From NCBI GenBank assembly GCA_000388065.2, contig KB932205.1: a stretch of 15,712 nt of DNA; one strand, written 5' to 3'. The notes below the pieces were generated by a model. It saw only the letters and a list, made by a program, of their open reading frames with translations. It was not told the DNA's origin and did no database searches. Source of the stretch: Fonticula alba ATCC 38817 (Eukaryota; Protista; Nucleariida). The first letter of the stretch is position 1; each line of letters starts with the position of its first letter. Below are positions 1 through 15,712 of this stretch, in pieces. Position numbers and translations under genes: made by a program.

Positions 1-508
1 TGCCCGAGCTGAATGCCATGACCGTGCGGTACGCGGCGCCCGAGGTGATCGGCGCCTTCCAGCGGGGCATTTCGCTGGACCGGGCGGCCTTCCTGCCGGC
101 GGACATCTTCAGCGCGGCGGTCATGCTGCTGGAGTGCCTCACGCGCGCGGTCCCCTGGCCAAACATGGACATGCAGGGGATTGTATCCGCCGTGCAGGCC
201 GGCCAGCGTCCGGGCGCCGACGCGCTGCCGGTCGCCGTGCAGGACCTGGTGCGAGCCGCCTGGCAGGCGGACCCCGCCATGCGGCCCCATGCGGCCAGCG
301 CGCGGTCCCCTGGCCAAACATGGACATGCAGGGGATTGTATCCGCCGTGCAGGCCGGCCAGCGTCCGGGCGCCGACGCGCTGCCGGTCGCCGTGCAGGAC
401 CTGGTGCGAGCCGCCTGGCAGGCGGACCCCGCCATGCGGCCCCATGCGGCCACCCTGCGCCAGCAGTGTGCCGCACTGTTCGTGGCCGTCGGCGGCCTGG
501 GCCAGTGA
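1..508 (+). CDS. Gene 1: 3' end of a TKL-like protein kinase (subdomains VIII-XI), 5'-partial; frameshifted as assembled by a 155-bp tandem duplication
   Basis: Frame from base 3 reads PELNAMTVRYAAPE (subdomain VIII), PADIFSAAVMLLECLTRAVPW (IX) and LVRAAWQADPAMRPHAA (XI). Joining 1-297 to 453-508 (removing one repeat copy) restores ...RPHAATLRQQCAALFVAVGGLGQ* with TGA at 506-508. This tail is collinear with the gene 2 C-terminus at 8900-9040. Confidence 0.88.
   Translation, partial: ARAECHDRAVRGARGDRRLPAGHFAGPGGLPAGGHLQRGGHAAGVPHARGPLAKHGHAGDCIRRAGRPASGRRRAAGRRAGPGASRLAGGPRHAAPCGQRAVPWPNMDMQGIVSAVQAGQRPGADALPVAVQDLVRAAWQADPAMRPHAATLRQQCAALFVAVGGLGQ
143..452 (+). repeat. Exact 155-bp tandem duplication (143-297 = 298-452) inside the gene 1 kinase CDS
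   Basis: GCGCGCGGTCCCCTGGCCAAAC...CCCCATGCGGCCA occurs at 143 and again at 298. The offset of 155 is not a multiple of 3. Confidence 0.95.
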
Positions 509-695
509 GTTACCCTCCGGCGTACCGCCCCGCCCCTGTCCATGAAACACCGTAACCGGTGCCTGGGGCGGGATACCACCAACACGGCTGCCACCTCCGG
601 GTCGCCAACCGAAGGGACCCAACACCAGCCCCTCCCGAGAAATGTGCCATGGGACAGGAGCACATTTGTGGCTATTTTTGAATTATAATTGTGGC

Positions 696-701
696 AATAA
701 A
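696..701 (+). promoter_or_regulatory. Candidate polyadenylation signal (AATAAA) for gene 1
   Basis: AATAAA in an AT-rich patch (667-705) about 190 nt after the gene 1 stop. An equivalent signal follows gene 2 at a similar distance. Confidence 0.5.
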
Positions 702-993
702 GAAGGCCCTTGGTGTTTTCAGGCACGGCCACCTCCCATGCTGCTTTGCCAGAATGCCCCAGATTCACCAGACTGAGCCTCGCCCATTTGAGCACAATGG
801 CGAGGGGGGGCGTCCCGCGCACTGGTCGGGGGTGGGATCCGCCCCCGCAGGGGCCTCTTGCGCGAGCCCCGAGCTCCGGGGCGGGTGACAATCAGCAGGG
901 AGCCAACGCCACACCACTCCCGAGGTGATACCCTCCGGAGTGTCGCTCCGGCGGGGCGCCGGAGAGGCCTGGCACCACTTCGCGGCAGGGCCG

Positions 994-1046
994 TGCGCGG
1001 TCTCCTGCGCGGTCTCCTGCGCGGTCTCCTGCGCGGTCTACTGCGC
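994..1046. repeat. 12-bp tandem repeat (TGCGCGGTCTCC) x ~4.4
   Basis: Copies at 994, 1006, 1018, 1030 (C>A variant) and a partial copy at 1042. No spacers. Confidence 0.95.
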
Positions 1047-1563
1047 CGCTCGGCCTCGGCGACATGCCGCCGGCCGCGCAGCCCGAGCACCGTCTCATCC
1101 CCGCGCCATGGTCCACCGGACGGGCGTGGCCTTCCCCGTGCCGGGGCGTGGCTGCTCGCCACCGGTCGGCCCCGGGGACCGCGCGTGTGCCCAGGCGGCC
1201 CTCTGCACAAGCATACACTCGCGCCGGTGCAGCTCGCAAGGGCGCGGCCGAGGCCCCTCCCATCGCCGGGGGCTGGCGTGGCTCGAGCGACGCCAGCCCG
1301 GCTGCCCGCGCCTCGGGCCACGCCGTGCATCGGTCCGCGCCCTCCGGTGCCCCTGGGGCCCGGGGCATTTGCCGCGGCCCGGCCTCCTCACCCGCATGCC
1401 TCTCCGCTGCCCGGCGGCCGGATCCGGCGAGGCGACCCTGCCGGGCCTGCTGCTCTGCCGGCCCCCGCCGCTCGCAGGGTCTCATCGTCGGAGGGTCCTC
1501 GTCGCCAGGCGAGCACCAAGCTGCCAGACTCTCCGTGGCTGTGCGCCTCGCGCCCACGCCCCC

Positions 1564-1576
1564 TTTTTTTTTTTTT
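1564..1576. repeat. T13 homopolymer followed by ATAG
   Basis: Read directly from the sequence. Confidence 0.9.
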
Positions 1577-1707
1577 ATAGGCCTCGCCCCCCGCCTGGCG
1601 GGCTGCATGCGCGACCGCGGCTCGCCGGATGGCCGAGCGCGTCGGCCGCCCGGCGCCGAGGCTTGCCGTGCTGCTGCGAGTCCGTGTCGAACCCAATAGC
1701 CGCCCTC

Positions 1708-1720
1708 TTTTTTTTTTTTT
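1708..1720. repeat. T13 homopolymer followed by CGCAAG
   Basis: Read directly from the sequence. Confidence 0.9.
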
Positions 1721-1839
1721 CGCAAGGGGGGGCATCCTGCGCGCGGGGGGTGCCCTTCTGTCGGATCGCCGGCCTTCGTGGCCTGCCGGATCGGCCCGTT
1801 CAAGGCCGGGCTCCTGGCGCATGCCCCCTCACGGGCGGC

Positions 1840-1913
1840 CTCGGCCAGGCAGCTCTCGGCCAGGCAGCTCTCGGCCAGGCAGCTCTCGGCCAGGCAGCTC
1901 TCGGCCAGGCAGC
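1840..1913. repeat. 15-bp tandem repeat (CTCGGCCAGGCAGCT) x ~5
   Basis: Perfect copies at 1840, 1855, 1870 and 1885, and 14 of 15 bases at 1900. Confidence 0.95.
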
Positions 1914-2138
1914 CGGCGCCCACGCTGCTGGCCTTGCGCCGTCGGCCGGAGACCACGCCCGCACTCGCTCCCGCCAGGCCTTCCCCCGCCCCGCCCCGGG
2001 GGCGCGCGTGAATGCTGCCCGCCCCCGCCGCCGGTGCTGGCCGCCGGCGTACACCATGATCTGTGCGCTCTCCAGCGCGAGCGGGTCCGGGCGACGCGAC
2101 GAATCGCGCCCCGGCCGCCGCACCGAGCATGCGGCCGA

Positions 2139-2639
2139 CCCCCCCCCCATATGAGGCCGGACGCGCGCCCCGACTGCGCGGGGCCGGCGCCCGGGCAGAC
2201 CACCGCATCAGGAGGGCCAACCCCCGCCGGACCGGGGGACTTACTGCCAACTCTCAGTACTACACATCAAGGACGTGTGCCCGCCGGTGCCTGGCGCCCT
2301 GTCTGCGCGGCAGGGACACGCGGCTTGCCACCCGGGCCAAAGCGCGGGAGGGCACCCGCCGGCCCCCCCCCCCCCCCCCGGCATCCCGGCTGACCGGGAA
2401 CATCCCGCCCAGCTCCGGGAGCCGGTGGCCCCGGCGGGGAGGGCGACCAGGTGAGACCCGCCGCGGCGGCGGCTCCGGCGGCAGCTGGGCTGGCCGCCAG
2501 GGGTCCCGCGCTCGGGCGGCCCGTGCGCCAGGTCATTGGACCCGGCAGGGGGTCCCCCCCCCCCCCGCGTTCGGCCGTGGCCGGCCCCTCCCGCGGGTCG
2601 GGCTTCTCCCACGGGGGGGGGGGGGGGGGGGGGGGGGGG
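2139..2639. repeat. Cluster of long C/G homopolymers upstream of gene 2: C10 (2139-2148), C17 (2363-2379), C13 (2554-2566), G27 (2613-2639)
   Basis: Read directly from the sequence. Homopolymer lengths may be imprecise in the assembly. Confidence 0.9.
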
Positions 2640-2975
2640 CCAGCCCCCGCATCTGGACCCTCGGGCGCGGTGGCGTGCGCCCGCGGCTCGGCACCGGCTG
2701 CAGGGGGCCCGGCAGGCCGCGGGCGCGCGTGCCCTCGATCTCGGCCCTCGTCGCCCGGACCGTGCCCCGGGCTGGCTGGCCCCCTTCCCGCGGAGCAGCA
2801 CGACCACGCAGCGCCGCGAGCGGGGCGCATAAGTGAAACATTCGCCCCGCCGATTCCGGTGCCCGAGACGGCCAGCCGCAGCCCCCACCACACCCCCTCG
2901 CGACAGAGTCCGCTCGCCTCCTGCCCTTGACATCCCGCGCCTTCTCGTCCCCGCCCCCCGCCCCCGGGATCCGAC

Positions 2976-4305
2976 ATGCTGCCGCTGGCCCTGGCGCTCC
3001 TGCTGCTGCTGCTGCTGGGCCTGCGCGCGGCCCCGACCCGGGCCGCCCTCGGGCCGGACTTCCCCCTGTACGCCGGGCCGCACGCGGTGCTGGCCCTCCC
3101 CCAGGATGCGGTCTTCATCACCCCCTACAAAATGCCCTCCATCGCCAATGGCCGGCTGGGGCCCATGGGCATCGTCCAGTTCAACCAGGTTGACAAGCTG
3201 CACTCGGTGTCGGAGACTCGCTGGGGCACCTTCTTCAATCCGAAGCCCCACAAGTCCAGCAACCACCTGCAGCTGGCCGGCCCCGACCCGCCGGACATCA
3301 TGTACATCCCGGTGCCGCAGACCTTCCAGCCGGAGATCCTTTTCCACACCCCGCACAAGGTGTCCATCTACTTCACCACCCCCGTGGACCGGCCCCTGCC
3401 GGAGCCCGAGACCCGCATCCTGGGCGCCCAGTCGGCCGGGCCCGGGGTGGTGGATTTGGTCGGACTCATCGGCGAGCCCGGGCCCGACCGCCTGCGAGAG
3501 CTCTACGTGGCAACCCTCTCCGCGGGGTCCCTGGACCGGGCCTTTTCCGACATGGTGATGCTCCAGGACCCGGTGCAGGTGGTCCCCGGCCCGGGCCGGT
3601 CTTTCTACATCTCCGACAGGGAGTCCCTCTTCCGGGTGAGTGCCTCCTCCGGGAGTCCCTTTACCATGTCCCTGCTGACGCCCCTCCCCGGGCCCCTGGA
3701 CCAGCTGGTCGTCTCGCGCTTCCTGTCCGCGCATGCCGACTGCCCGGACGCCGGGGACATGCTGGGGCTCCGGCCGACGGGCCAAATCGACCTGCAGTTC
3801 TGCTTCGACGGCAACACCATGAGCCACTCCCTGTTGGCCCCCCTCCCGGCGGAGGCATCGCCCGGGGGACGCATCTTGGCCGCCCCGGCCGGCTCCCTGG
3901 ACGAGGCGGTGCCCTGGTTCCTCTACCTGGAGCCGGGCCCCTATGGGGTCCTCTGGCGCGGGACCATCTCCCTGGGCGGCATCGCCTGGCAGCGGGTCCT
4001 CCTCCCGAGCATCGTGTCGAACAATGCCCACCTCCCCGGCCCGGGGGGCATGCATCTGGTCCGCCTGCAAATGAGCCCGGGATCCCCCGGGCGCTGGGTC
4101 CCCCTGGTCGGGGACGTGGCCCTCTTCGACGCCGAGACCTTCGGCTGCGATGTCGATCCCAGCATCGTCTGCAGCGCCCCGGGGACGCCCATTCTGCTGG
4201 AGCGCAATTGGGCATGCGCCGATGATCGTGCGATGGCGCCCTTCGTGTCGGCGCAGCAGCTGTGCGCCGGCTGCCAGAATGGCTTCTACTTGGACCGTCT
4301 GGTCG
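2976..4305 (+). CDS. Gene 2 exon 1: signal peptide, N-terminal globular ectodomain A and start of the Cys-rich linker of a receptor-like TKL kinase
   Basis: ATG 2976 begins MLPLALALLLLLLLGLRAAPTRA, a classic hydrophobic signal peptide. The frame stays open to ...QLCAGCQNGFYLDRLV-G, where the donor G|GTGCGT begins at 4306. Many motifs are shared with gene 3 exon 1 (E.RWG.F, ATLSAG.L, PG.GR.FY, GI.W.RVLL, VALFD.E.FGC..DPSI.C, QLCAGC..GF.LDR). Confidence 0.9.
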
Positions 4306-4830
4306 GTGCGTGGTGCCTCTCTTGTCGGGCCTTCTTCCGCTGCTGGCGCCTCTCCGGGTGGCCTGGAGTGACATCCGCCTCGCTCGCGCCCCTCCCCCGG
4401 TCCTCCCACTGACCATCTCCCCCCTCCCCCGCCGCTGCGCCTCCTTCACATGCGAATGTGCCCTCCCCCNNNNNNNNNNNNNNNNNNNNNNNNNNNNNNN
4501 NNNNNNNNNNNNNNNNNNNNNNNNNNNNNNNNNNNNNNNNNNNNNNNNNNNNNNNNNNNNNNNNNNNNNNNNNNNNNNNNNNNNNNNNNNNNNNNNNNNN
4601 NNNNNNNNNNNNNNNNNNNNNNNNNNNNNNNNNNNNNNNNNNNNNNNNNNNNNNNNNNNNNNNNNNNNCCCCCGCCGCTGCGCCTCGTTCACATGCGAAT
4701 GTGCCCTCCCCCGGTCCTCCCACTGACCATCTCCCCCCTCCCCCGCCGCTGCGCCTCCTTCACATGCGAATGTGCCCTCTCCCCTCCCCGGCTGCCGGGG
4801 TCGGCTGGGCCGCCGCCGACTCCCCGCCAG
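4306..4830 (+). other. Gene 2 spliceosomal intron (GT-AG, phase 1); contains an assembly gap
   Basis: Donor GTGCGT at 4306 and acceptor CCGCCAG at 4824-4830. There is no AG in the visible sequence from 4369 to 4828. Splicing joins G+AC to give Asp and keeps the frame into DGPPFSHPSHSCRPC. The intron sits at the same codon position and phase as the gene 3 intron. Confidence 0.88.
4394..4778. repeat. 71-bp intronic minisatellite (CCCCCGGTCCTCCCACTGACCATCTCCCCCCTCCCCCGCCGCTGCGCCTCCTTCACATGCGAATGTGCCCT); copy number unresolved
   Basis: Full copies at 4394-4464 and 4708-4778, with partial copies on both sides of the 199-N gap (4470-4668). One C>G variant at 4687. Confidence 0.93.
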
Positions 4831-7800
4831 ACGGACCCCCCTTCTCCCACCCGAGCCACTCCTGCCGGCCGTGCGCCCAGCCCGGCTGTCGGACTTGCAC
4901 CTCGACGCAATGTCTGGCCTGCGGCAGCCCCCTCCTTTTGGAGTTCCGCCAGCCGGCCGGCCAGACCGCATGCGTGTTGAGCTGCTCCAGCGGCTTTGTC
5001 AAGCACGCCGGCACCTGCCAGCCGGCCGAGCTCACGTCGCCGGTCGGCGCGCTGGCCCCCCCGAGGCCGAGCCACTTCTCCGGCCTGCCGGCCGGCCAGG
5101 AGCTCACGGCCATCGTGGAAACCCGGCTTTCTGTCATCCCCGGCACCGGGATGCCGGTCGTGCCGGCGCCGTCGGACTCGGCAGGGCCGGCCGGCCGCAA
5201 CCTCCTGCTATTCACCCGGACCCTGGAGGTGTACCTGGTGTGGGGCGAGGATGTCAACCAGGCGGACGCCTCGCCGCCGACGGTGATCCACCTGCTGGGC
5301 GGCGGCCCGCTCCCGGCCCCGGTGGTCACCTACACCGAGACGGCGACCCTCCAGGCCGGGCCGAGCCTGCTGCTGGTGGGGCTCATGTGTCTGGCCAATG
5401 GCCAGGCGTACCAGGTCCGGCTGTCGTGCCAGGCGCCCGGGCCCTGCACGCTGGCCGCCGCGCCGGTCCCGCTGCCACTTCCGCTGTACAGCTGCCTCGA
5501 CATCCAGCGCCTGGGCGCCGACCTCTTTGTCATACAGGCCCCCCGGCCGAGCTCGGTCTACCTGATCCAGGTCAACGTCAGCACCACGTACATGGACTAC
5601 CACGAGCTGCCGGCCGGCCACTTGGCCGCCCTGCCGCAGGACGGCGGGACCGGGCGCTCCTTCACCATCGCCGAGCAGGGCACATGGATTGTGCACAGCG
5701 GCCCGGCGGACGCCGGCGTCATGGCCCTGCGTCAGATCCTCAGCACCTGGGACTCGCGCATAAGCGTGGCCAAGGACCGCTTCCTGCCTGGCATCGTGGA
5801 CTTTGCGCCGGTCCTCCTCCCGCGCCCTGCGCCGGAGCCGCCGGTACTGGTCTTCACCCGGATCAAGGCGACCCTCTGGGAGGCGGCCCAGGTCCCGGGC
5901 GACATGCTCCCCGCCGGGCGGTCCACCGAGCTGCCCTTCATCGGGCACCTGCTGGGCACCCTGCCGGAGGCCCTGGCCCACGAGCTGGACGCCCGGTTCC
6001 AGGCCGTCGCCCTGCCGGATGGGCGCCCGGAGCTCCCGGCCGCCCTGCTGCTGCTGGCCCGCGGGTTCTTCGGGGTGTCGTTCCTCCGCTGCATGCCGGG
6101 GGACGGCCCGTGTGCCCTCCTGCCGGCCACCTTCACCCCGCTGTCCGGGGCCCTCCGGCTGGCAGCCGGCGCGGCGCTCTGGCAGCCGGCCATCCCCCTT
6201 GTCCACCGGGCCCCCGGGCAGGCGCTATCGCTGCTGGGCTTCTCGGTGGCCACGGGCCCGGTGACGGTGGACCTCCTGTCGAACTGCCCTCCCGGGCTGC
6301 ATGCTCGGCCCACCGGGGAGTGCCTCTGCCACGAGACGTGTGCCGCGTGCTCGGACCCGGGCACCGGGGCCTTCGTGTGCGATGTCTGCCGGCCGGGCTT
6401 TGCGCGGGCCCCGGCCGGGGCCAGCCCCGATCGGTGCCTCGTCTGCCATGACTCTTGCCTGGAGTGCGGGCTGCCGGGCGATTCGGGCGCCTGCGAGGCC
6501 TGCCCGGCCGGGGCCTGGCTCCATGCCGGGGCCTGTGTGGCTGGCTGCCCGGCCGGCACCTGGCCGGACAGCCCGTCACGCGGGTGTGTCCCCTGCCCGG
6601 CCGGCTGCGCTGCCTGCGCCGGGGCCGCCGCCTGCACCGCCTGCAGCAGCCGGCACTTCCTGGGCCCGGACAGCATGTGCCACCCGTGTCACAGCTCCTG
6701 TGCCAGCTGCGCGGACAACGCCACCTGCACCGAGTGCCACAGCGGCTTGGTGTTTCTGAGCCCCGATCCGCAGGTTGCCTCGCTGTGCGGGAGCACCTGC
6801 GCTCCGGGGGATTATGTCGAGGCGGTCCGGTGCGCCACCTGCGCCCCCTCGTGTGCCCTCTGCACCGGGGCCGCCGAGCGGTGTGAGCTGTGCGCGGATG
6901 GGCACTTCCGGCTGACCGGCCCGCCGGGCGCCTGCGCTGCCTGCCCGGCGGGCTGCGCCTCGTGCACCGCCGACCGGTGCCTGGCCTGCGAGCCGGGGCT
7001 CTTCCTCGACTCGCGCGGCGCCTGTGTGAGCGCCTGCCCGGCCGGGACCTTCGCCGACACCGAGTCGTGCCAGCCGTGCGACCTGAGCTGCGCCACCTGC
7101 GTCGGGGGCGGCGCCGACCAGTGCGCCAGCTGCGCGGCCGGGCTGGACTTCGTGCCGGCCGGCGGCTCGGCCGGCACATGCGTGTCGGGCTGCCCGGAGG
7201 GCCAGTACCGGGACCGTGTCTCCGGCGACTGCTTCCCATGCGACACGGCGTGCGCCACGTGCAACGGCCCGTCGGACAAGGACTGCTGGCGCTGTGCCAG
7301 CGGTGTCCTGCAGGATGGCGACTGCGTGCAGCACTGCGCCGCCAAGCATGTGGCCCTGGCCGGGCGGTGCCTGCCCTGCCATGTGTCGTGCGACCAGTGC
7401 GCCGGGACCCGGAGCACTGAGTGCCTGCCGGACTGCCCGGGTGATCTGCTGGCCCTGCCGGCCGGGGCGTCGCCCATGCGCTGCGTGCCGGCCTGCCCGG
7501 TGGGCTACAATGCCTCGGGCGCCGGGTGCAGCCCCTGCGGGGAGCACTGCGCCAGCTGCCCGGAGCAGGCGCCCACGTGCGCCCTGTGCGACCGGGGCTG
7601 GCTGCTGGCCAGCCCAGACTGCGTGGCCGAGTGCCCGGCCGGGAGCTCGCCGCTGGGCGGGCTGTGCTCCACGTGCCATGGCAGCTGCGCGACGTGCTAC
7701 GGCCCGGGGCCGGACCAATGCCTGGCCTGTGGCCCGGGCACGCCGTTCCTTGTGGGTGGCCGCTGCCACGCTGGCTGCCCTGCGGGGACCTTCCAGGATG

Positions 7801-9040
7801 GGCACGCCTGCCAGCCATGCAACTCCACCTGCGCCGCGTGCGCCGGCCCCAGCACCTCGGATTGCACTGCCTGCGCGGCTGGTCGCCTTCTCCTGGGTGG
7901 ATCATGTCTCCAGCAGTGCCCGGATGGCTTCTTCCCCGAGGGCGGGCTTTGTGTCCCTTGCGATCCCACCTGCGCCACGTGCGACAACCCCGGCACTTGC
8001 GCCTCGTGCGGCGCCGGGCGCTTCCTCTCGCCTGCCGGCCTCTGCGTCGACAGCTGCCCAGCCGGGGCTCATGCGTGCGCCGCCAGCGGCCGGTGCCTCG
8101 CCTGCCCGGCGCACTGCGCCGAATGCACATCGTCCGGCGCCTCCTGCATGCCGGCCTGCACCGGCTGCGAGGAGGGCTTCCTCCTGTCGGACGACCAGTG
8201 CGTTGCCTCGTGCCCGGCCGGCACGTACAGCCCCCCGGAGCTCGGCGCCTGTGCCGCGTGTGCTGCCTCCTGTCCGACGTGCGTCGAGCGGGCGGACCGG
8301 TGCACCAGCTGCGCGTCGGGTGTCCTCGTGCGCGAGAGCGGCACCTGCGTGCCGGCCTGCCCGCCCGCGCATGCTCCCTTCGAGGGGGTGTGCCTGGCCT
8401 GTCCGGCGGGCTGTGAAGCGTGCCAAGCCGACCGGACCCAGCCCCCGTGCACCGTCACGGCCGATGGCTCGCTGGCCTGCCCGGCGGTGGCTTCGTGCTC
8501 GCGCTGCGCTGGCGGCCTGTTCTTGGTGGACTCCGCCTCGTGCACCGCCGAGTGCCCGTCCGGCACCTTCGCCGATGACGAAGGCACCCCACCGGCATGC
8601 GCCGCCTGTCACGCCAACTGCACCGCGTGCATGGGCCCCACGGAGGCCGACTGCTTCGAGGCACCCAAAGGGGGGGCCTCGCGCGTCGGCCTGGCCGTGG
8701 GCCTGTCCGTGGGCCTGCTGCTGCTGCTGATCCTGCTGATCCTGCTGGTGCTGTTCTGCGTCCGCCGGCGCGCCAAGGCCGGGCTCGCGGCCCCGAAGGA
8801 CCTGGACGCCGAGGACGCCACCATGCTGAACACCATCGTGGAGCTGGCCCTGCCCGGGGCCATCCTGGTCGGTGTCGACANNNNNNNNNNNNNNNNNNNN
8901 TGCCGGTCGCCGTGCAGGACCTGGTGCGAGCCGCCTGGCAGGCGGACCCCGCCATGCGGCCCCATGCGGCCATCCTGCGCCAGCAGTGCGCCGCATTCTT
9001 TGTGGCTGCCGGTGGTCTGGGTCCGGGAATGGGGCCATGA
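4831..9040 (+). CDS. Gene 2 exon 2: Cys-rich linker, globular domain B (~5030-6280), furin-like Cys-rich repeat stalk (6285-8654), TM helix (8685-8762), juxtamembrane segment, gap, kinase C-terminus (8900-9040)
   Basis: Open from 4831 to the gap at 8881. It has repeated C..C...C..C.G....C..C units typical of FU repeats, then the hydrophobic VGLAVGLSVGLLLLLILLILLVLFCV followed by the basic stop-transfer RRRAK. After the gap it reads LPVAVQDLVRAAWQADPAMRPHAAILRQQCAAFFVAAGGLGPGMGP* (TGA 9038-9040), homologous to the gene 1 kinase tail. About 1793 codons are visible before the gap. Confidence 0.9.
8881..8900. other. 20-N scaffold gap that must hide most of the gene 2 kinase domain
   Basis: The left flank ends at ...LALPGAILVGVD (juxtamembrane) and the right flank resumes at the kinase subdomain X/XI region. 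The frame is discordant if the gap is truly 20 bp. Confidence 0.85.
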
Positions 9041-9210
9041 ACCATGCTTGCACGCCTGTCGGGTGGCGGAAGCCGGCCATCGAGCGGCGGCCGTGTGCTG
9101 GCTGACACATGGCACCTCCTCCCGCCGGGTTTTTGAAACCCAAGTTCACGCGCCCTCCCGGAAGTCAAAGCCACCACACAGTACGCGTGTGAATGCCAGG
9201 CAGCAATGTG

Positions 9211-9220
9211 AATAAATAAA
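9211..9220 (+). promoter_or_regulatory. Candidate polyadenylation signal (overlapping AATAAATAAA) for gene 2
   Basis: About 170 nt after the gene 2 stop, in a locally AT-rich patch of an otherwise very GC-rich window. Confidence 0.55.
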
Positions 9221-9626
9221 AATGGAACATATAACACCATCGACTAATCCGCCCACACAAAATGGGCAAAGGCCTGTGAGATGCCCGTGGACGGGCGGTT
9301 TTCTAAGAGGCGGCAGTTGGAGGCACATGGTCAAGCACACACCAGGGCGCGATGACCAGAGTCCCGTGAGGTTCCCGCTGCACGCACATGACCGCGTGCC
9401 GTGCGCACGTGCCGACGACCGGCCAGCAGTCCCCGAAACCATCGGCCTCGGGGGCCCGCCCGCTCAAACATGCGACACGAAACTTGGGACTGTTCGAAAC
9501 TCGCCGCACCGCCCCTGCCGCCGCGCAAACGGCGGGGTGAAACCGTGTGCCAGTGTCTCGCACGAGGGGGGGACGATCCTCATAGTCTCTGGCGCTGTGC
9601 CGGAGACAGAGACCCACCTGGCCGGG

Positions 9627-9656
9627 GTTGTTGTTGTTGTTGTTGTTGTTGTTGTT
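9627..9656. repeat. (GTT)10 microsatellite, followed by C10 and C8 tracts (9659-9677)
   Basis: Read directly from the sequence. Confidence 0.95.
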
Positions 9657-9784
9657 CGCCCCCCCCCCTCCCCCCCCGATTTCTCTCTTTCGGCCTGGTG
9701 GAACTCGAAATCATGGCACCGGCGGAGGCCTGCCAACGGCCTGGATCAGGAGCTCTCGGAGCCGTTCCCGGAGGGGGGGGGGGG

Positions 9785-10239
9785 NNNNNNNNNNNNNNNN
9801 NNNNNNNNNNNNNNNNNNNNNNNNNNNNNNNNNNNNNNNNNNNNNNNNNNNNNNNNNNNNNNNNNNNNNNNNNNNNNNNNNNNNNNNNNNNNNNNNNNNN
9901 NNNNNNNNNNNNNNNNNNNNNNNNNNNNNNNNNNNNNNNNNNNNNNNNNNNNNNNNNNNNNNNNNNNNNNNNNNNNNNNNNNNNNNNNNNNNNNNNNNNN
10001 NNNNNNNNNNNNNNNNNNNNNNNNNNNNNNNNNNNNNNNNNNNNNNNNNNNNNNNNNNNNNNNNNNNNNNNNNNNNNNNNNNNNNNNNNNNNNNNNNNNN
10101 NNNNNNNNNNNNNNNNNNNNNNNNNNNNNNNNNNNNNNNNNNNNNNNNNNNNNNNNNNNNNNNNNNNNNNNNNNNNNNNNNNNNNNNNNNNNNNNNNNNN
10201 NNNNNNNNNNNNNNNNNNNNNNNNNNNNNNNNNNNNNNN
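9785..10239. other. 455-N scaffold gap flanked by a G-run (9773-9784) and a C18 run (10240-10257)
   Basis: Read directly from the sequence. Confidence 0.95.
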
Positions 10240-10275
10240 CCCCCCCCCCCCCCCCCCTCTCCGGAGGCATTCCTC

Positions 10276-11632
10276 ATGTTCGGCCCGTGTGCCGCCGCTG
10301 GTGCCGGCCCCCTGGCGACCGGGCGGCCCCCGGGCCCGGCGCTGCCGTGGCCGCTGCCGCTGCTGGCGCTGCTCCCTCTGTTGCTGGCGGTGATCAGCGC
10401 GCCGGTGGCCCGGTCAGCACCGGCTGTCCACCTTCATGCGGCCAGAAGCCCCATATCCTCCGAGACGCTTGTCTATCACACGGCCCCGGGCAGGCCCTCG
10501 ATCGGTAGCTCGCGCTCGATGGACAACCTCCTCCTCTTGTTCCAGCAGCAGGACGCCCTGGACGCCGTGCCCGAGGTCCGGTGGGGGAGCTTCATGCCGA
10601 CCGACTTCACCTCGCGCGTGACTCGGCTCCGAAGCGCACCGCCCTCCCCGAAGCCGATCATGCACCTGCCGGTGGTTGACAACAGCGGGGAGATGGCCTT
10701 CATTGAGCATACCGACCGGTGGGTGGGGCTCTTTGCCGGCGATTTTGACTATGCCCTGCCCGGGCCATCGACCGAGCTCCTGGCCGGTGTCGGAGTATCC
10801 ACCGTGAGCGCGGATCTCCTGGGCATATACCAACCATTGAACGGCCCGTGGCGCGTCTATATGGCGACGCTTTCCGCGGGCGGCCTGACGGGATTGAGCC
10901 ACTCACTTCCGGAACTGCCGAGCCGGCCACATGTTAGCCCTGGCATCGGTCGAGCCTTCTATCTGGCCAGCGAGCACCGGCTTTTCCACCTGCTAGTTGG
11001 GGGCAATCACGTCGCCCAATTCGATCTCAGCATTTCGGCATCGGTGCGCCGGATGGCCGTTTCGCGGATCCTCTCCCGGGAAACGGTCTGCCCGTCCGCG
11101 GCCGATGTGGTCCTGCTCTTGGACTCGCACAGGGTGATGATCCTCCCCTGCCATCCCGACCCGGGCTTCCAGGAGAGCATGCTGGTGGCCGATTTGCCGG
11201 CCGGCGCCACGGCCGACGGGGACTTCATCACCCCCCCGGCCCCGGCCATGACCGAGGCATTCCCCTTCCTGCATTACCTGGACTCGAATGGCGCGCTGTG
11301 GCGCGCCGACGTCGCCCCTCTCACCGGCATCACCTGGCGTCGTGTCCTTCTCTCCGGTGTGTCGTTGTTCAGCGATTTGCAGCTGCTTCGGTTGAAAACC
11401 ACGGCCTCCGGGCCCGGGGCCTGGACGCTTGTCAGGCACCATGTGGCCCTCTTCGACTCGGAGGCCTTCGGCTGCCACACCGATCCGAGCATCATCTGCG
11501 ATGCCGACGGGGTGGTGACCGGGTCACCAGTTGGGTGGACTTGCGCTCTGGACCGCACGGAGTCGCCCTTCGCCCTGCCTGGTCAACTATGTGCCGGGTG
11601 CCCGGATGGCTTTTTCCTCGACCGTCCAGCCG
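10276..11632 (+). CDS. Gene 3 exon 1: signal peptide and ectodomain A of a paralogous receptor-like kinase (start codon tentative)
   Basis: ATG 10276 begins MFGPC...LPWPLPLLALLPLLLAVISAPVARS, with a hydrophobic core. The frame is open to QLCAGCPDGFFLDRPA-G and the donor G|GTATGT at 11633. It is homologous to gene 2 exon 1. The true start could lie in or before the gap. Confidence 0.85.
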
Positions 11633-11861
11633 GTATGTGGGGCTTCCCTGCCTTCCTGGCTTGTGAAGATGCATTCGCACACACGCACACACGCACACAC
11701 ACACACACAAATGCATTCACGCACACAGATGCATTCACACACACACACACACACACACACGCACAAAAGCCTCGCTCAAACGCCTCGCTCAAACGCCTCG
11801 CTCACACCCTTGCCTCTCGTGTCTCTTTCGCTCCCATGCCCTTCGACTGTTTGGGCAACAG
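11633..11861 (+). other. Gene 3 spliceosomal intron (GT-AG, phase 1, 229 bp)
   Basis: Donor GTATGT. Pyrimidine-rich, AG-free stretch 11770-11859 before CAACAG (AG at 11860-11861). Splicing gives ...DRPA-D-EPAFSSPSHGCRPCWQYSCRTC, which aligns with gene 2 ...DRLV-D-GPPFSHPSHSCRPCAQPGCRTC. Confidence 0.92.
11669..11807. repeat. Intronic compound repeat: three ATGCATTC heads (11669, 11711, 11729) each followed by CA-microsatellite, then 13-bp GCCTCGCTCAAAC x3 (11769-11807)
   Basis: Read directly from the sequence. The third 13-mer has one substitution. Confidence 0.9.
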
Positions 11862-14800
11862 ACGAGCCGGCCTTCTCAAGCCCGAGCCATGGGTGTCGCC
11901 CCTGCTGGCAGTACAGCTGCCGGACATGCAACCAGGACCATTGCCTGGCCTGCTTCCATCCTCTGCTCTTGGAGCCCAGCGGCCCGGGCGGGGCCACCAT
12001 TTGCGTGGCCAGTTGCTCGGAAAACTACGCCCCCCTCGCCGGCGTCTGCCAACGGGTGGACATCGCCCGGGCCGACCTCAGCATGCGGAGCCCGCTCCCG
12101 GACTCGCCTGGCGATCTCCCAGCGGGGAGGATCATCACCGGGGCCGGTGAGACGTGCCTCTCCTCGGGCGGGGCCAGCACCCTTCCCATCATCACCTCCC
12201 CTGCGTTGCCCTGTCCGCGGAATATCCTCCTCTTTTCCGGGTCCCAGGAATCGTGGATCATGGCCAACGCCGACATCGGCAAGCCGGACAAGGCGCCCCC
12301 CCGGCCGGTGGACATCCTGTCCCGGGGCATCCGCGGCCCGGTCATTGCCCTGGCCGAAGTGGGCCCCTTCCTCCAGGCCGATGGGACCCTGGTCCTGGGG
12401 CTGGTCTTGTGTGGGGGCGAGGCCGGCGAGCTGTTCGAGGCCTGGCTGTCCTGCCCTGGGTCCGGGCTGTGCATGGCCTCCAGCCTGGCCAGCCCCCAGT
12501 CTCTCGGGGTGGTGGCATGCGTCGGGGTCCAGCGCCTCGGCCCGCAGGCGATCGTCGCATACTCCTCGGCATTGGGTGTTGTCATTCACCTGCAGGCCGA
12601 TCTGACCAGCCTGCGTTTCAAGAGCTTCTCCATGAAGGGCGTCGGCCTGGTGGGCCTCCCCAGCGTGCGGGCCAACCGGTCCCTGCCCGCGTCCCGCGAT
12701 CCGGACCCCTGGCTGGTTGTCGGGACCCCGGGGTCGAACACGGTGGCCGGGCCGCTGGCCCTGCCGGCCAGGGACTCGCGCTGGCGTGGCCTCAGCCAGG
12801 GCTTCATCACCCGCGACTTCCTCGACTCCGAGGCCCTGTATGCGCCGGTGTACCTGCCGCGCGGCTCGCTGGGCTTCGGGTCGGAGCTCTTCTTCGCCCG
12901 GACCAGTGGCCAGCGGCTGGAGGTTGTCCGCGTGCCGGGGGACATGCTGCCATCCGGCCGGACCATTCGCCTGGCCACCTCGCTGCAGGTCCTCGGGGAC
13001 TATCCCTCGGTGGTGGGGGGCGGCCTCGGCTTCCAGCGCGAGATCCACTTCCAGGCCCTGTGCCTGGATGGCTGGAGCATGCCGGAATACCCGAGCGCCC
13101 TGTTGCTCCTGACCCGGAAGTTCTTCGGGCTGTCGCTGCTCCGGTGTCGGTCGGCCAGCGAGCCGTGCTTCTTGCTCCCGGCGCGCTTTGCCCGGCTCTC
13201 CCCGGGGCTGGAGCTTCAGCCCGACGAGGACTTCTGGATGCCCTTCATCGCCCGGGTGCTTGAGCCTCCGGAGCCGGCCCGTGAGGGCACCGCCCTCACG
13301 CTATGGACCCATGGTCGGTCCATCGGCGGTGTGGTCACCGGCTTGGAGTTTTCGTGCAGCTCTGGCCACTATGGCCTGGATTGTCGGCCATGCCACCCGT
13401 CCTGTCGCCAGTGCAATGGGCCCGGGGCGGCGGACTGCACCGTCTGCATGCACTGGCTGCCCGGGGCCCCGCAGGAGTGCATCGCCACCTGTCCGCCAGG
13501 CAGCAGTCCCGGCCCCCTTCCGCAGGACCCTTGCCAGTGCCATTCGTCCTGTTCCCAGTGCGACATATCGGCCCACGCGCCAGTCCGGTGCATTGACTGT
13601 CGGCCTGGGTTCGTTTTGCCGCCGGATGAGCCGGCCCCGGCCGTGTGCCTGCCATGCGCGCACCCCTGCCTCAGGTGCACCCTTCCCGAGCACCCGACCG
13701 CTTGCACTGCCTGCATGCCGGGGAACTACTTCCACCAGGGGCAGTGTCTTCTCGCCTGTCCGGACGGCTTCTGGCCGGATCACCTCGAGCTAAAGTGTGC
13801 TGCCTGCTCGGCGGCCTGTGCCTCCTGCAGCTCGTCCGACTTTTGCATCGTCTGCAAGCCCGGCTGGTTCCGGCGATCTGATGGGCAGTGCATTCGGTGC
13901 GATGCGTCGTGCGCCAGCTGCCACGGGCTCGACAGCTGCCTCACCTGCCAGCCGGGCCTCGTCTTCTTGCAGACCGCCGAGCAGGTGGATTCCCTTTGCG
14001 GCCGGACCTGCCCGCCAGGGGAGCTCCCCGGTGCCAGCCGGTGCGTCAAGTGCGACGACTCGTGCGGGCTCTGTGCCGTCGGCCCGAGCCAGTGTGTGGC
14101 GTGCGCCGAGGGGCACCGGTGGGCCTCGGGGCCGCCGCGCCCCGGCGGCACGGGGTCCTGTGTTCCCTGCCACCCGGGGTGCGCGTCCTGCACCTCTGGC
14201 AGCTGCCACGCCTGCGGGGGCGGGCTGCTGCTGACCCGGCAGGGCGACTGCGTGGCCGTCTGCCCGGCTGGCACCTACGGCACGGATGAGTCCTGCCAGC
14301 CGTGCGATGTCAGCTGCGCCACCTGCGTCGGGGGCCAGGCCGACCAGTGCGCCAGCTGCGCCGCCGGGCTGGCATTGGCCGAGGTCGCCGATGGGGTGGG
14401 CTCCTGTCGGTCGACCTGCCCGACCGGCGAGTATCATGATGTCCCTTCCGGCAGCTGCATGCCTTGTGACGCGGCGTGCGCCACGTGCAACGGCCCGTCG
14501 GACAGGGACTGCTGGCGCTGTGCCAGCGGTGTGCTGCAGGATGGCGACTGTGTGCAGCACTGCGCCGCGAAGCATGTGGCCCTGGCCGGGCGGTGCCTGC
14601 CCTGCCATGTCTCGTGCGACCAGTGCGCCGGGACCCGGAGCACCGAGTGCCTGCCGGCCTGCCCGAGCGAGCTGCTGGCCCTGCCGGCCGGGGCGTCGCC
14701 CATGCGCTGCGTGCCGGCCTGCCCGGTGGGCTACAGTGCCTCGGGCGCCGGGTGCACCCCCTGCGGGGAGCACTGCGCCAGCTGCCCCGGCCGGCCGGAC

Positions 14801-15712
14801 GCCTGCGCCCTGTGCGACCGGGGCTGGCTGCTGGACGCCCCGCTGTGCGTGGCCTCCTGCCCGGTCCAGACCACGCCCCTGGGCGGGCAGTGCATGGTGT
14901 GCGACGAGACGTGCGACGCATGCTTCGGGCCCGGCCCGGAGGATTGCGTCACATGCGGCCGGCGGTTCCCGCTGCTCTTTGACGGCCGGTGCCTGGCCAC
15001 ATGCCCCCCGGGGACCTTCCAAGATGGCAAGGCTTGCCTCCCCTGCAATGGGTCCTGCGCCGGCTGCAATGGGCCCGAGCCTGTCCACTGTACCGCCTGC
15101 CCCGGGGGGCTGGTTCTCCACGTGGGCGTCTGCACGTCCGCATGTCCGGATGGCTTCTTCCCCGAGGGCGGGCTTTGTGTCCGCTGCGAGCCCACCTGCG
15201 CCACGTGCGACAACCCCGACACCTGCGCCTCGTGCGGCGCCGGGCGCTTCCTCTCGCCTGCCGGCCTCTGCGTCGACAGCTGCCCAGCCGGGGCTCATGC
15301 GTGCGCCGCCAGCGGCCGGTGCCTCGCCTGCCCGGCGCACTGCGCCGAATGCACATCGTCCGGCGCCTCCTGCATGCCGGCCTGCACCGGCTGCGAGGAG
15401 GGCTTCTTCCTGTCGGACGACCAGTGCGTTGCCTCGTGCCCGGCCGGCACGTACAGCCCCCCGGAGCTCGGCGCCTGTGCCGCGTGTGCTGCCTCCTGTC
15501 CGACGTGCGTCGAGCGGGCGGACCGGTGCACCAGCTGCGCGTCGGGTGTCCTCGTGCGCGAGAGCGGCACCTGCGTGTCGGCCTGCCCGCCCGCGCATGC
15601 TCCCTTCGAGGGGGTGTGCCTTGCCTGCTCCAGTGGCTGCGAGCAGTGCGAAGCGGCGCCCGGGCAGACCGGGTGCACCATCGGCCTGGATGGGCGCCTG
15701 ACCTGCCCGGAG
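11862..15712 (+). CDS. Gene 3 exon 2 (3'-partial): Cys-rich linker, globular domain B, furin-like Cys-rich repeats from ~13355; TM and kinase expected beyond the window
   Basis: Manual translation (codons from 11864) is open for 1283 codons to the window end. Motifs shared with gene 2 include RNILLF, VPGDMLPSGR, PSALLLLTRKFFGLSLLRC and PCFLLPARF, and the FU repeats are collinear with gene 2 at a constant offset of 7226 bp. It is absent from the ORF track, presumably because it has no stop inside the window. Confidence 0.92.

What the first reader, a model, noticed from the sequence alone, without database searches (positions are those of the whole stretch)
1..15712. Tandem array of FU-repeat receptor kinases with divergent sensing tips and homogenised stalk and kinase: candidate diversifying recognition-receptor locus
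Seen: three co-oriented paralogues. The N-terminal domains A and B of genes 2 and 3 share only scattered motifs, while parts of the membrane-proximal stalk are 96-99.5% identical and the kinase tails of genes 1 and 2 share 72 identical bp. Established: variable ligand-facing domains on conserved signalling modules are typical of recognition systems such as plant receptor-like kinase clusters and Dictyostelium TgrB1/TgrC1 allorecognition genes. Inference: if this is Fonticula alba (aggregative, sister lineage to fungi), the array could be an independently evolved receptor repertoire for kin, prey or pathogen recognition feeding a common kinase output. No function can be shown from sequence alone.
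Basis: partly seen in the sequence, partly recalled or inferred. Interest (0 to 1): 0.78.

Follow-up and report, generated by a model that had tools for sequence, protein, structure and literature searches.

The report
Fonticula double-propeller receptor kinase array
This stretch of the social amoeba Fonticula alba holds parts of three neighbouring genes from a family of about 90 giant surface receptor kinases seen only in this species. Each gene has its own very old pair of sensor heads, while stalk and kinase are kept alike in patches by copying between neighbours; what the heads sense is untested.

Summary
The window (Fonticula alba, contig C5) carries the kinase tail of gene 1, gene 2 (H696_03229) and most of gene 3, all on the + strand. 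They belong to an array of at least 18 such genes.

- **Architecture:** signal peptide, beta-propeller A, Cys cap and one furin-like unit, beta-propeller B, a furin-like stalk of about 790 aa, one membrane pass, then a TKL-type Ser/Thr kinase.
- **Heads versus stalk:** heads A and B of genes 2 and 3 are collinear but only 35% and 33% identical. Two sharply bounded stalk tracts are 96.2% (316 bp) and 98.5% (476 bp) identical, silent sites included.
- **Several partners:** other stalk segments of gene 2 match gene 5, gene 4 and a gene further downstream. This fits repeated short-tract gene conversion.
- **Family-wide:** identical runs of 20 aa or more occur 136 times in stalks, 131 in kinases and 3 in heads.
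- **Gaps:** two of the three assembly gaps are harmless (one in an intron, one upstream of gene 3). The 20-N gap hides about 275 codons of gene 2's kinase.
- **Not shown:** diversifying selection cannot be tested because silent sites are saturated. Function and expression are untested.

The scan reached the same reading on other DNA of this genome (s1-065516).

The parts
3..508 (+). Gene 1: kinase C-lobe tail only (from the APE region to the stop at 506-508). The body lies upstream of the window and reads N.
   Evidence: Pfam PK_Tyr_Ser-Thr / Pkinase; translation; 85% aa identity to gene 4's kinase.
143..452 (+). Perfect 155-nt tandem duplication (143-297, 298-452) inside gene 1's kinase tail. 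It shifts the frame from 3 to 2 and is probably an unmerged overlap in the assembly.
2976..4305 (+). Gene 2 (H696_03229) exon 1: signal peptide, beta-propeller head A (about residues 26-390) and a conserved Cys cap that ends in the ...YLDR motif.
   Evidence: ORF and donor GTGCGT at 4306; the public model P0001 has the same junction; AlphaFold model pLDDT 86.9, propeller matches Z about 16; no Pfam hit.
4306..4830 (+). Gene 2 phase-1 intron (GT...CAG). It contains assembly gap 4470-4668 inside a tandem repeat of about 71 bp.
   Evidence: 4390-4469 is 98.8% identical to 4701-4780
4831..5024 (+). Gene 2 exon 2 start: one furin-like Cys-rich hinge unit between the two heads.
5016..6290 (+). Gene 2 head B: a second beta-propeller-like domain, with no detectable sequence relation to head A.
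   Evidence: AlphaFold pLDDT 84.5, pTM 0.87; Foldseek hits WD40-type propellers; hhalign A against B gives probability 0.75%; no Pfam hit.
6282..8672 (+). Gene 2 furin-like (FU, CxxC-rich) stalk: about 790 aa, 16.6% Cys, 48 CxxC motifs.
   Evidence: Pfam VSP 41.6 bits, above its cutoff, plus GF_recep_IV and Furin-like_2; nearest solved sequences are R-spondin-2 and the EGFR Cys-rich region; Cys counts.
6949..7401 (+). Tract of gene 2 about 95% identical to gene 5 (three genes downstream; L010:5916-6367).
   Evidence: (pS 0.00-0.07 at 7032-7200)
7246..7561 (+). Conversion tract 1, gene 2 side. It pairs with 14472-14787 of gene 3 at 96.2%.
7920..8395 (+). Conversion tract 2, gene 2 side. It pairs with 15146-15621 of gene 3 at 98.5%; the core 7998-8351 is 99.7% identical.
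   Evidence: (pS 0.00-0.07)
8685..8880 (+). Gene 2 transmembrane helix (8685-8762) and juxtamembrane segment. These are near-identical to gene 4 and to the gene at about C5:128 kb.
   Evidence: 94% to L025; no mismatch to gene 4 in 8804-8879
8881..8900 (.). Assembly gap (a 20-N placeholder) that hides about 275 codons, nearly the whole kinase domain of gene 2.
   Evidence: the public model skips it as if it were an intron
8903..9040 (+). Gene 2 kinase subdomain XI tail and stop codon (9038-9040).
9785..10239 (.). Assembly gap in the intergenic or 5' region, 36 nt upstream of gene 3's start codon.
10276..11632 (+). Gene 3 exon 1: signal peptide, head A and Cys cap.
11633..11861 (+). Gene 3 phase-1 intron (GTATGT...CAG) containing a CA microsatellite.
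11862..15712 (+). Gene 3 exon 2 (partial): hinge FU unit, head B (about 12047-13366) and FU stalk from about 13352. It runs off the window, and the next 1621 bases read N.
14472..14787 (+). Conversion tract 1, gene 3 side. In the 150-bp window 14725-14874, which overlaps the tract's 3' end, gene 5 is the closer partner (93.6%, against 85% for gene 2).
15146..15621 (+). Conversion tract 2, gene 3 side.

Best explanation
The window is a piece of a long head-to-tail array of Fonticula alba genes for type I single-pass receptor Ser/Thr kinases of the TKL kind.

Each protein carries two unrelated beta-propeller heads at its tip, A and B, joined by a small Cys-rich hinge. Below them comes a rigid furin-like stalk of about 790 residues, then one membrane helix, then a non-RD kinase.

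**Inferred mechanism.** A ligand bound by the propeller heads brings receptors together, and the kinases then signal to a common set of substrates.

**Shown evolutionary mechanism.** The paralogues are old: heads are 15-57% identical and silent sites are saturated. Short tracts of about 0.07-0.5 kb in the stalk, transmembrane, juxtamembrane and kinase parts have recently been overwritten from different neighbours by gene conversion. This gives a patchwork of 95-100% identical blocks with sharp edges.

The heads escape this process. Most simply, they are too divergent to pair. Selection to keep distinct specificities is possible but not shown.
For: **Organism and gene.**: H696_03229 of Fonticula alba; relatives are named 'TKL protein kinase'.

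**Architecture.**
- Pfam finds kinase and furin-like/VSP repeats.
- Both heads give confident propeller models.
- The nearest solved kinase is B-Raf, E 1e-16.
- Complete paralogues carry VAVKK, HCDLKPGN and DLG.

**Conversion.**
- Tract edges are sharp.
- Silent-site difference is 0.00-0.07 inside the tracts against 0.4-0.75 in the neighbouring stalk.
- Run tests give 0 of 20000 shuffles.
- Different partners match different segments: genes 3, 5, 4 and the gene at about C5:128 kb.
- Introns and intergenic DNA show no similarity between copies.

**Family-wide.**
- There are at least 87 kinase-tail, 91 head A and 51 head B matches in the genome.
- Identical runs of 20 aa or more: 136 in stalks, 131 in kinases, 3 in heads.
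- Median pairwise identity: A 25%, B 29%, stalk 48%, kinase 58%.
- The head A and head B trees share their supported clades.
Against: - No reads were available, so I cannot exclude that some near-identical blocks were made or sharpened by the short-read assembler. This locus has gaps in or beside every kinase seen and a perfect 155-nt duplication.
- The kinase domains of genes 1-3 themselves are almost wholly unseen. The catalytic motifs come from paralogues.
- Expression, ligand binding and kinase activity are untested.
- Kinase identity between copies could owe part to purifying selection.
Confidence: 0.8

Rival explanations
1. One reading: the array is a diversifying recognition system for kin, prey or pathogens. 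Positive selection drives the heads apart, and selection keeps a common signalling module.
For: - Identity rises from tip to membrane.
- The heads never share identical runs.
- Paralogues have a non-RD kinase motif. From my own knowledge, that motif is common in pattern-recognition receptor kinases.
- The family is very large and lineage-restricted.
Against: - dN/dS is uninformative because silent sites are saturated.
- Head trees are star-like with very long tips, and gene 2 has no head paralogue above 39% identity. The divergence is therefore old.
- There are no polymorphism or expression data.
- Homology-dependent conversion explains the pattern without selection.
Confidence: 0.25
2. The near-identical blocks are assembly artefacts. 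A short-read assembler reused or mixed reads of paralogues, so the mosaic is not in the real genome.
For: - Gaps fall in or beside the kinase of genes 2, 3, 4 and 5.
- There is a perfect 155-nt tandem duplication at 143-452.
- The flanks of gap 4470-4668 are duplicated.
- The core of tract 2 has only 1 mismatch in 354 bp.
Against: - Tract 1 and the gene 5 tract differ at 4-5% of sites, so they are separate copies.
- Tract edges lie in gap-free sequence.
- The same pattern is seen in 68 stalk and 73 kinase protein pairs across several contigs.
- Assemblers usually break at such repeats; they do not copy them.
Confidence: 0.1
3. A single recent unequal crossover or partial duplication gave genes 2 and 3 a shared 3' half, which has since decayed unevenly.
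For: - The genes are adjacent and co-oriented.
- The two tracts sit at the same offset (7226 bp) with no indels between them.
Against: - Between the two tracts (7562-7919) identity falls to about 55%, with silent-site difference 0.46-0.75.
- Segment 6949-7245 matches gene 5 and not gene 3, and the transmembrane and juxtamembrane parts match gene 4 and L025.
- One event cannot give several donors.
Confidence: 0.05
4. Strong purifying selection on stalk and kinase alone explains the identical blocks.
For: Stalk and kinase are more conserved than the heads across the family.
Against: Silent sites are identical inside the tracts (pS 0.00-0.07) but saturated in stalk repeats of the same kind next to them. 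The run of unchanged third positions is 132 codons, reached by 0 of 20000 shuffles.
Confidence: 0.02

Closest known systems
Entamoeba histolytica transmembrane kinases (EhTMKs; about 90 genes; PMC2880585, PMC2211552)
   Same: Both have a signal peptide, a CXXC-rich ectodomain of the Giardia VSP / Igl kind, one membrane helix and a cytosolic tyrosine-kinase-like (TKL) domain. Both are families of about 90 genes in an amoeboid phagotroph. Some EhTMKs act in phagocytosis.
   Different: The Fonticula proteins are about twice as long and carry two beta-propeller heads above the Cys-rich part. The head A profile finds those heads only in Fonticula. Common descent of the kinases or repeats was not tested. 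The patchwork conversion shown here has, to my knowledge, not been described for EhTMKs.
Animal EGFR / insulin-receptor type receptors
   Same: The layout is globular domain, Cys-rich unit, globular domain, furin-like Cys-rich region, one membrane pass, kinase. The stalk matches the R-spondin and EGFR furin-like repeats.
   Different: The globular domains here are beta-propellers, not L domains, and have no Pfam hit. The kinase is TKL-like with HCDLKPGN, not a tyrosine kinase. Fonticula has no TK (PMC4342544). The stalk is far longer.
Plant receptor-like kinase and resistance-gene clusters
   Same: Both form large tandem arrays of single-pass receptor Ser/Thr kinases with variable ectodomains on a conserved kinase. 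Non-RD kinases occur in both, and neighbours exchange sequence.
   Different: The ectodomains are of a different kind (propellers plus FU repeats, not LRR, lectin or LysM). The nearest solved kinases here are Raf, not RLK/Pelle-IRAK. The lineages are unrelated.
Dictyostelium TgrB1/TgrC1 allorecognition pair
   Same: Both are surface proteins of an aggregative amoeba encoded by neighbouring genes, with variable outer parts.
   Different: The Tgr proteins have IPT/TIG ectodomains and no kinase. Their hallmark is extreme polymorphism between strains, which cannot be examined here. This family is a repertoire of many old paralogues, not one polymorphic pair.
Propeller-plus-Cys-rich receptors (Met/plexin Sema-PSI, LDL-receptor YWTD-EGF)
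   Same: An extracellular beta-propeller is followed by a small disulphide-rich module.
   Different: There is only a generic propeller fold match (Z about 16 to many unrelated WD40-like propellers). No Sema, PSI or Ldl_recept_b Pfam hit was found. The Atlas leads to YWTD propellers score below 0.9.

Membership tests
Receptor Ser/Thr kinase of the TKL group (generic class) | Protein kinase domain closest to TKL kinases, with a Ser/Thr-type catalytic loop | tested here: met
   In the window only tails are present (Pfam E 3e-7). Complete paralogues L016, L025 and L017 match Pkinase at E 1e-32 and carry HCDLKPGN, VAVKK and DLG. The nearest solved kinase is B-Raf, E 1e-16. NCBI names relatives 'TKL protein kinase'.
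Receptor Ser/Thr kinase of the TKL group (generic class) | Type I topology: signal peptide, ectodomain, single transmembrane helix, cytosolic kinase | tested here: met
   There is a hydrophobic N-terminus at 2976 and at 10276. A single Leu/Ile-rich helix lies at 8685-8762, followed by RRR and the juxtamembrane segment. Topology was read from the sequence; no predictor was run.
Receptor tyrosine kinases (EGFR / insulin receptor type) | Tyrosine-kinase-group catalytic domain (HRDLAARN-type loop) | tested here: not met
   The loop is HCDLKPGN in paralogues. Raf is the nearest solved kinase. Suga et al. found no TK in Fonticula (PMC4342544).
Receptor tyrosine kinases (EGFR / insulin receptor type) | Receptor L domains flanking a furin-like Cys-rich region | tested here: not met
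   Furin-like repeats are present, but the globular domains have no Recep_L_domain hit and fold as beta-propellers.
Entamoeba-type transmembrane kinases (EhTMK) | CXXC-rich ectodomain related to Giardia VSP / Igl, one transmembrane helix, TKL-like kinase, large family | tested here: met
   Pfam VSP scores 41.6 and 41.3 bits, above the 31.4 cutoff. The gene 2 stalk has 48 CxxC motifs. The genome holds at least 87 kinase-tail copies. The family description comes from PMC2880585.
Entamoeba-type transmembrane kinases (EhTMK) | Common descent with EhTMK kinase and ectodomain families A-F | not tested
   No Entamoeba sequence was compared. The head A profile found only Fonticula proteins.
Giardia variant-specific surface proteins | CXXC-rich ectodomain ending in a transmembrane helix and a short CRGKA cytoplasmic tail | tested here: not met
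   The repeats match the VSP model, but the cytoplasmic part is a juxtamembrane segment plus a kinase, not a five-residue tail.
Dictyostelium TgrB1/TgrC1-like allorecognition genes | IPT/TIG ectodomains and extreme between-strain polymorphism | tested here: not met
   No IPT/TIG hit was found, and the heads are propellers. Polymorphism cannot be tested with one genome.
Gene-conversion mosaic among tandem paralogues | Sharply bounded tracts, identical at silent sites, with different partners along one gene, embedded in old divergence | tested here: met
   no similarity of introns or intergenic DNA
Locus under diversifying (positive) selection | dN/dS above 1 at ligand-facing sites, or excess non-synonymous polymorphism | tested here: inconclusive
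   pS is 0.40-0.55 for every head pair tried, GC3 is 0.91, and dN/dS of 0.4-1.3 at saturation carries no information. No second isolate is available.

The most novel reading that the evidence does not exclude
Fonticula alba evolved on its own a germline repertoire of roughly 50-90 double-propeller receptor kinases, each with a fixed, distinct specificity. It uses them to tell bacterial prey, kin or other environmental cues apart. Gene conversion keeps all of them plugged into one shared stalk-and-kinase chassis. That would be an innate-recognition-like system in the sister lineage of fungi, in an organism reported to lack tyrosine kinases.
Probability: 0.25. Interest if true: 0.8.

Novelty: new variant of a known kind. 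Interest (0 to 1): 0.55.

Why it matters
Fonticula is the aggregative sister lineage of fungi and has no tyrosine kinases (PMC4342544). A family of about 90 receptor Ser/Thr kinases with two lineage-specific propeller heads would be its main candidate machinery for sensing the outside world.

The locus is also a clean natural example of how conversion can homogenise the signalling chassis of a receptor family while the sensing heads stay distinct.

Four literature searches in the held library turned up no paper that describes the family. The public records call these genes 'hypothetical protein' or 'TKL protein kinase'. Several public models, including H696_03229, lack their kinase only because of assembly gaps.

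Tried and rejected
- **Upstream flank.** The 20 kb upstream of the window reads N, so gene 1's body could not be seen.
- **More genome DNA.** Stalk paralogues on C10, C11 and C77 and the rest of the C5 array were therefore not analysed at DNA level. I did not try to get them another way.
- **dN/dS.** Values by domain were computed but rejected as uninformative because of saturation.
- **BLASTP high-identity HSPs.** BLASTP HSPs of at least 90% identity missed the mosaics because BLAST merges tracts into longer, lower-identity HSPs. I replaced this with exact-run counting.
- **Heads A and B as an internal duplication.** Not supported by sequence: hhalign probability 0.75%.
- **Specific propeller family.** A Sema, PSI, YWTD or FG-GAP identity of the heads is not supported. 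There is no Pfam hit, only generic propeller matches, and Atlas scores are below 0.9.
- **RNA genes.** tRNA and Rfam scans of the window found nothing.
- **Joined spliced model.** I made and searched none. Searches were exon by exon, by reference. The only full-length sequence used was the public protein returned.

Full report
**Identity and setting.**
- The window is G000:C5:82813-98524 of a 31.3-Mb, GC-rich genome of 214 contigs.
- A word search with the head B region of gene 2's exon 2 returned a 100% match to H696_03229 of Fonticula alba. All seven hits were Fonticula alba; three are named 'TKL protein kinase' and four 'hypothetical protein'.
- Earlier notes of this scan on other pieces of the same genome say the same. 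One follow-up, 127 kb downstream (s1-065516), reached the same overall reading. I tested each point here independently.

**Gene models and the three gaps.**

*Gene 2.*
- It starts at 2976 with a signal peptide. Exon 1 ends at 4305, followed by the donor GTGCGT.
- The intron ends at CAG (4830), and exon 2 runs open from 4831 to the gap at 8881.
- The public protein P0001 has the same junction.

*Gene 3.*
- It starts at 10276. Exon 1 ends at 11632 (donor GTATGT).
- The intron holds a CA microsatellite and ends at 11861. Exon 2 runs open to the window's end.
- Both introns are phase 1 and sit after the same ...YLDR motif. Similarity of 29 paralogous exon 1 copies also ends at that motif.

*Gaps.*
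- Gap 4470-4668 lies inside gene 2's intron, within a tandem unit of about 71 bp whose copies flank it. It does not touch the reading frame.
- Gap 9785-10239 ends 36 nt upstream of gene 3's ATG.
- Gap 8881-8900 is not harmless.
  - The left flank ends in the juxtamembrane segment (frame 3). The right flank begins in kinase subdomain XI (frame 2).
  - Complete paralogues have about 275 residues between these points.
  - The 20 N therefore stand for at least 0.8 kb, and continuity of gene 2 cannot be shown.
  - The public model jumps the gap as if it were an intron, and so lacks a kinase.

*Gene 1 and downstream genes.*
- Gene 1 is only a kinase C-lobe tail (3-508).
- It contains a perfect 155-nt tandem duplication (143-297, 298-452) that shifts the frame. 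This is most likely an unmerged overlap in the assembly.
- Downstream DNA shows genes 4 and 5 of the same kind. Each again has a gap in or beside its kinase.

Searches were exon by exon, by reference.

**What the proteins are.**
- *Kinase and stalk.* Pfam finds the kinase tail, and in the stalk it finds Giardia-VSP-type, GF_recep_IV and Furin-like_2 repeats. The stalk of gene 2 (6282-8672) is 16.6% Cys with 48 CxxC motifs. Its nearest solved sequences are the furin-like repeats of R-spondin-2 and EGFR.
- *Heads.* Neither head has a Pfam hit. With alignments of 30 and 28 paralogues, AlphaFold gives confident all-beta models: A at pLDDT 86.9 and B at 84.5, both with pTM 0.87.
  - Both models match many unrelated WD40-like propellers and no particular family. 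For head A, VIA-align gives Z about 16.5 and Foldseek gives E about 1e-5; for head B, Foldseek gives E about 1e-6.
  - A and B show no sequence relation to each other.
- *Catalytic motifs.* Complete kinase domains in paralogues carry VAVKK, HCDLKPGN (non-RD, Ser/Thr-type) and DLG. They are nearest to B-Raf, E 1e-16. This agrees with the report that Fonticula has no tyrosine kinase (PMC4342544).

**The mosaic.**

*Identity along genes 2 and 3.* Along the aligned exon 2 of genes 2 and 3, nucleotide identity is 42-68% through head B and most of the stalk. It then jumps in two tracts:
- 7246-7561 has 12 mismatches in 316 bp.
- 7920-8395 has 7 mismatches in 476 bp, with 1 in 354 bp in its core.
- Both tracts have sharp edges, and about 55% identity lies between them.

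*Silent sites and chance.*
- Silent-site difference is 0.00-0.15 inside the tracts, against 0.4-0.75 beside them.
- The longest identical run is 61 codons, against at most 23 in 20000 shuffles. The run of unchanged third positions is 132 codons.

*Several partners.*
- 6949-7401 of gene 2 is about 95% identical to gene 5.
- The transmembrane and juxtamembrane parts match gene 4, with no mismatch in 8804-8879. They match the gene at about C5:128 kb at 94%.
- In gene 3, the window 14725-14874 is closer to gene 5 than to gene 2.
- The kinase tails of genes 1, 2 and 3 are 92.6-97.5% identical up to the stop codon, where similarity ends.
- Introns and intergenic DNA share nothing.

Several donors, sharp edges and silent-site identity inside otherwise saturated genes are the marks of repeated short-tract gene conversion. 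They do not fit a single duplication or purifying selection.

**Family-wide picture.**
- The genome holds at least 87 kinase-tail, 91 head A and 51 head B matches (lower bounds). They lie in co-oriented arrays on C5, C10, C9, C11 and C8. On C5 alone, head A hits sit mostly 8-10 kb apart from 44 to 281 kb, all on the + strand.
- Gene 2's closest head A anywhere is 39% identical, and its closest head B is 41%.
- A profile of head A run against 1.84 billion representative proteins found 63 proteins. The ten I looked up, including the weakest, are all Fonticula alba.
- Among 66 annotated proteins, identical runs of 20 residues or more number 136 in stalks, 131 in kinases, 4 in transmembrane/juxtamembrane parts and 3 in heads. 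The heads make up 39% of all residues.
- Median pairwise identity is 25% for A, 29% for B, 48% for the stalk and 58% for the kinase.
- The trees of A and B are star-like with long tips, but they share their supported clades. The two heads therefore travel together.

**What is not shown.**
- Diversifying selection cannot be assessed. With GC3 at 0.91, silent differences plateau at 0.40-0.55 for every head pair tried, so dN/dS has no meaning.
- The old, star-like divergence points to a repertoire of long-fixed specificities, not to ongoing diversification.
- Homogenisation limited to stalk and kinase is what homology-dependent conversion would give without any selection.
- Expression, ligands and kinase activity were not tested.
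- Without reads, an assembler contribution to the most identical block cannot be excluded. The 4-5% differences in the other tracts and the family-wide pattern argue against a pure artefact.

**Comparison and verdict.**
- The closest described analogue is the family of about 90 Entamoeba histolytica transmembrane kinases: CXXC/VSP-like ectodomain, one helix, TKL-like kinase (PMC2880585).
- The Fonticula family adds two lineage-specific propeller heads and a much longer stalk. Its layout recalls the EGFR and insulin receptors without being a tyrosine kinase.
- Four searches of the held library turned up no paper that describes the family.
- I class it as a new variant of a known kind.

Noticed in passing
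window 143-452: A perfect 155-nt tandem duplication lies inside gene 1's kinase tail. It shifts the frame from 3 to 2, and only the second copy reads through to the normal C-terminus and stop (506-508). It is probably an unmerged contig overlap; if real, gene 1 is frameshifted.
   Followed up: partly
window 8881-8900; 15713-17333, 25593-25781 and 32688-34637 in window coordinates (L008, L010): Every array gene seen here has an assembly gap in or beside its kinase-coding part. This fits kinase segments too alike for the assembler to resolve. It also means several public protein models lack a kinase for technical reasons.
   Followed up: partly
window 4390-4469 and 4669-4783: Gap 4470-4668 is flanked by copies of one intronic unit of about 71 bp (98.8% identical). 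The gap may be spurious or may hide more copies.
   Followed up: partly
L010, about window coordinate 31500-31560 (G000:C5 about 114.3 kb): The stalk of gene 5 changes reading frame in the middle of an FU repeat. This is either a sequencing error or a pseudogene.
   Followed up: no
G000:C10:588478-589061 against window 6908-7492: A stalk patch on another contig is 91% identical to gene 2. Exchange, or recent shared descent, may therefore reach beyond the local array.
   Followed up: no
window 994-1046, 1840-1913, 2613-2639, 9627-9656, 11678-11804: Simple repeats lie in intergenic and intronic DNA: a 12-mer x4.4, a 15-mer x4.9, a run of 27 G, (GTT)10, a CA microsatellite and a 13-mer x3.5. The long GC-rich ORFs on both strands of 550-2975 look spurious.
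   Followed up: no
window 4140-4305 and 11467-11632; alignment A1: Head A ends in a small cap with invariant Cys (C391, C399, C414, C430 and near-invariant C433 of gene 2) just before the conserved phase-1 intron. No PSI or other Pfam hit was found.
   Followed up: partly
P0008, P0027, P0029, P0040 (annotated Fonticula proteins): Some public models of 2400-3460 aa contain two head A (and, in three of the four, two head B) sets. Two neighbouring genes were probably fused across gaps by the annotation.
   Followed up: no
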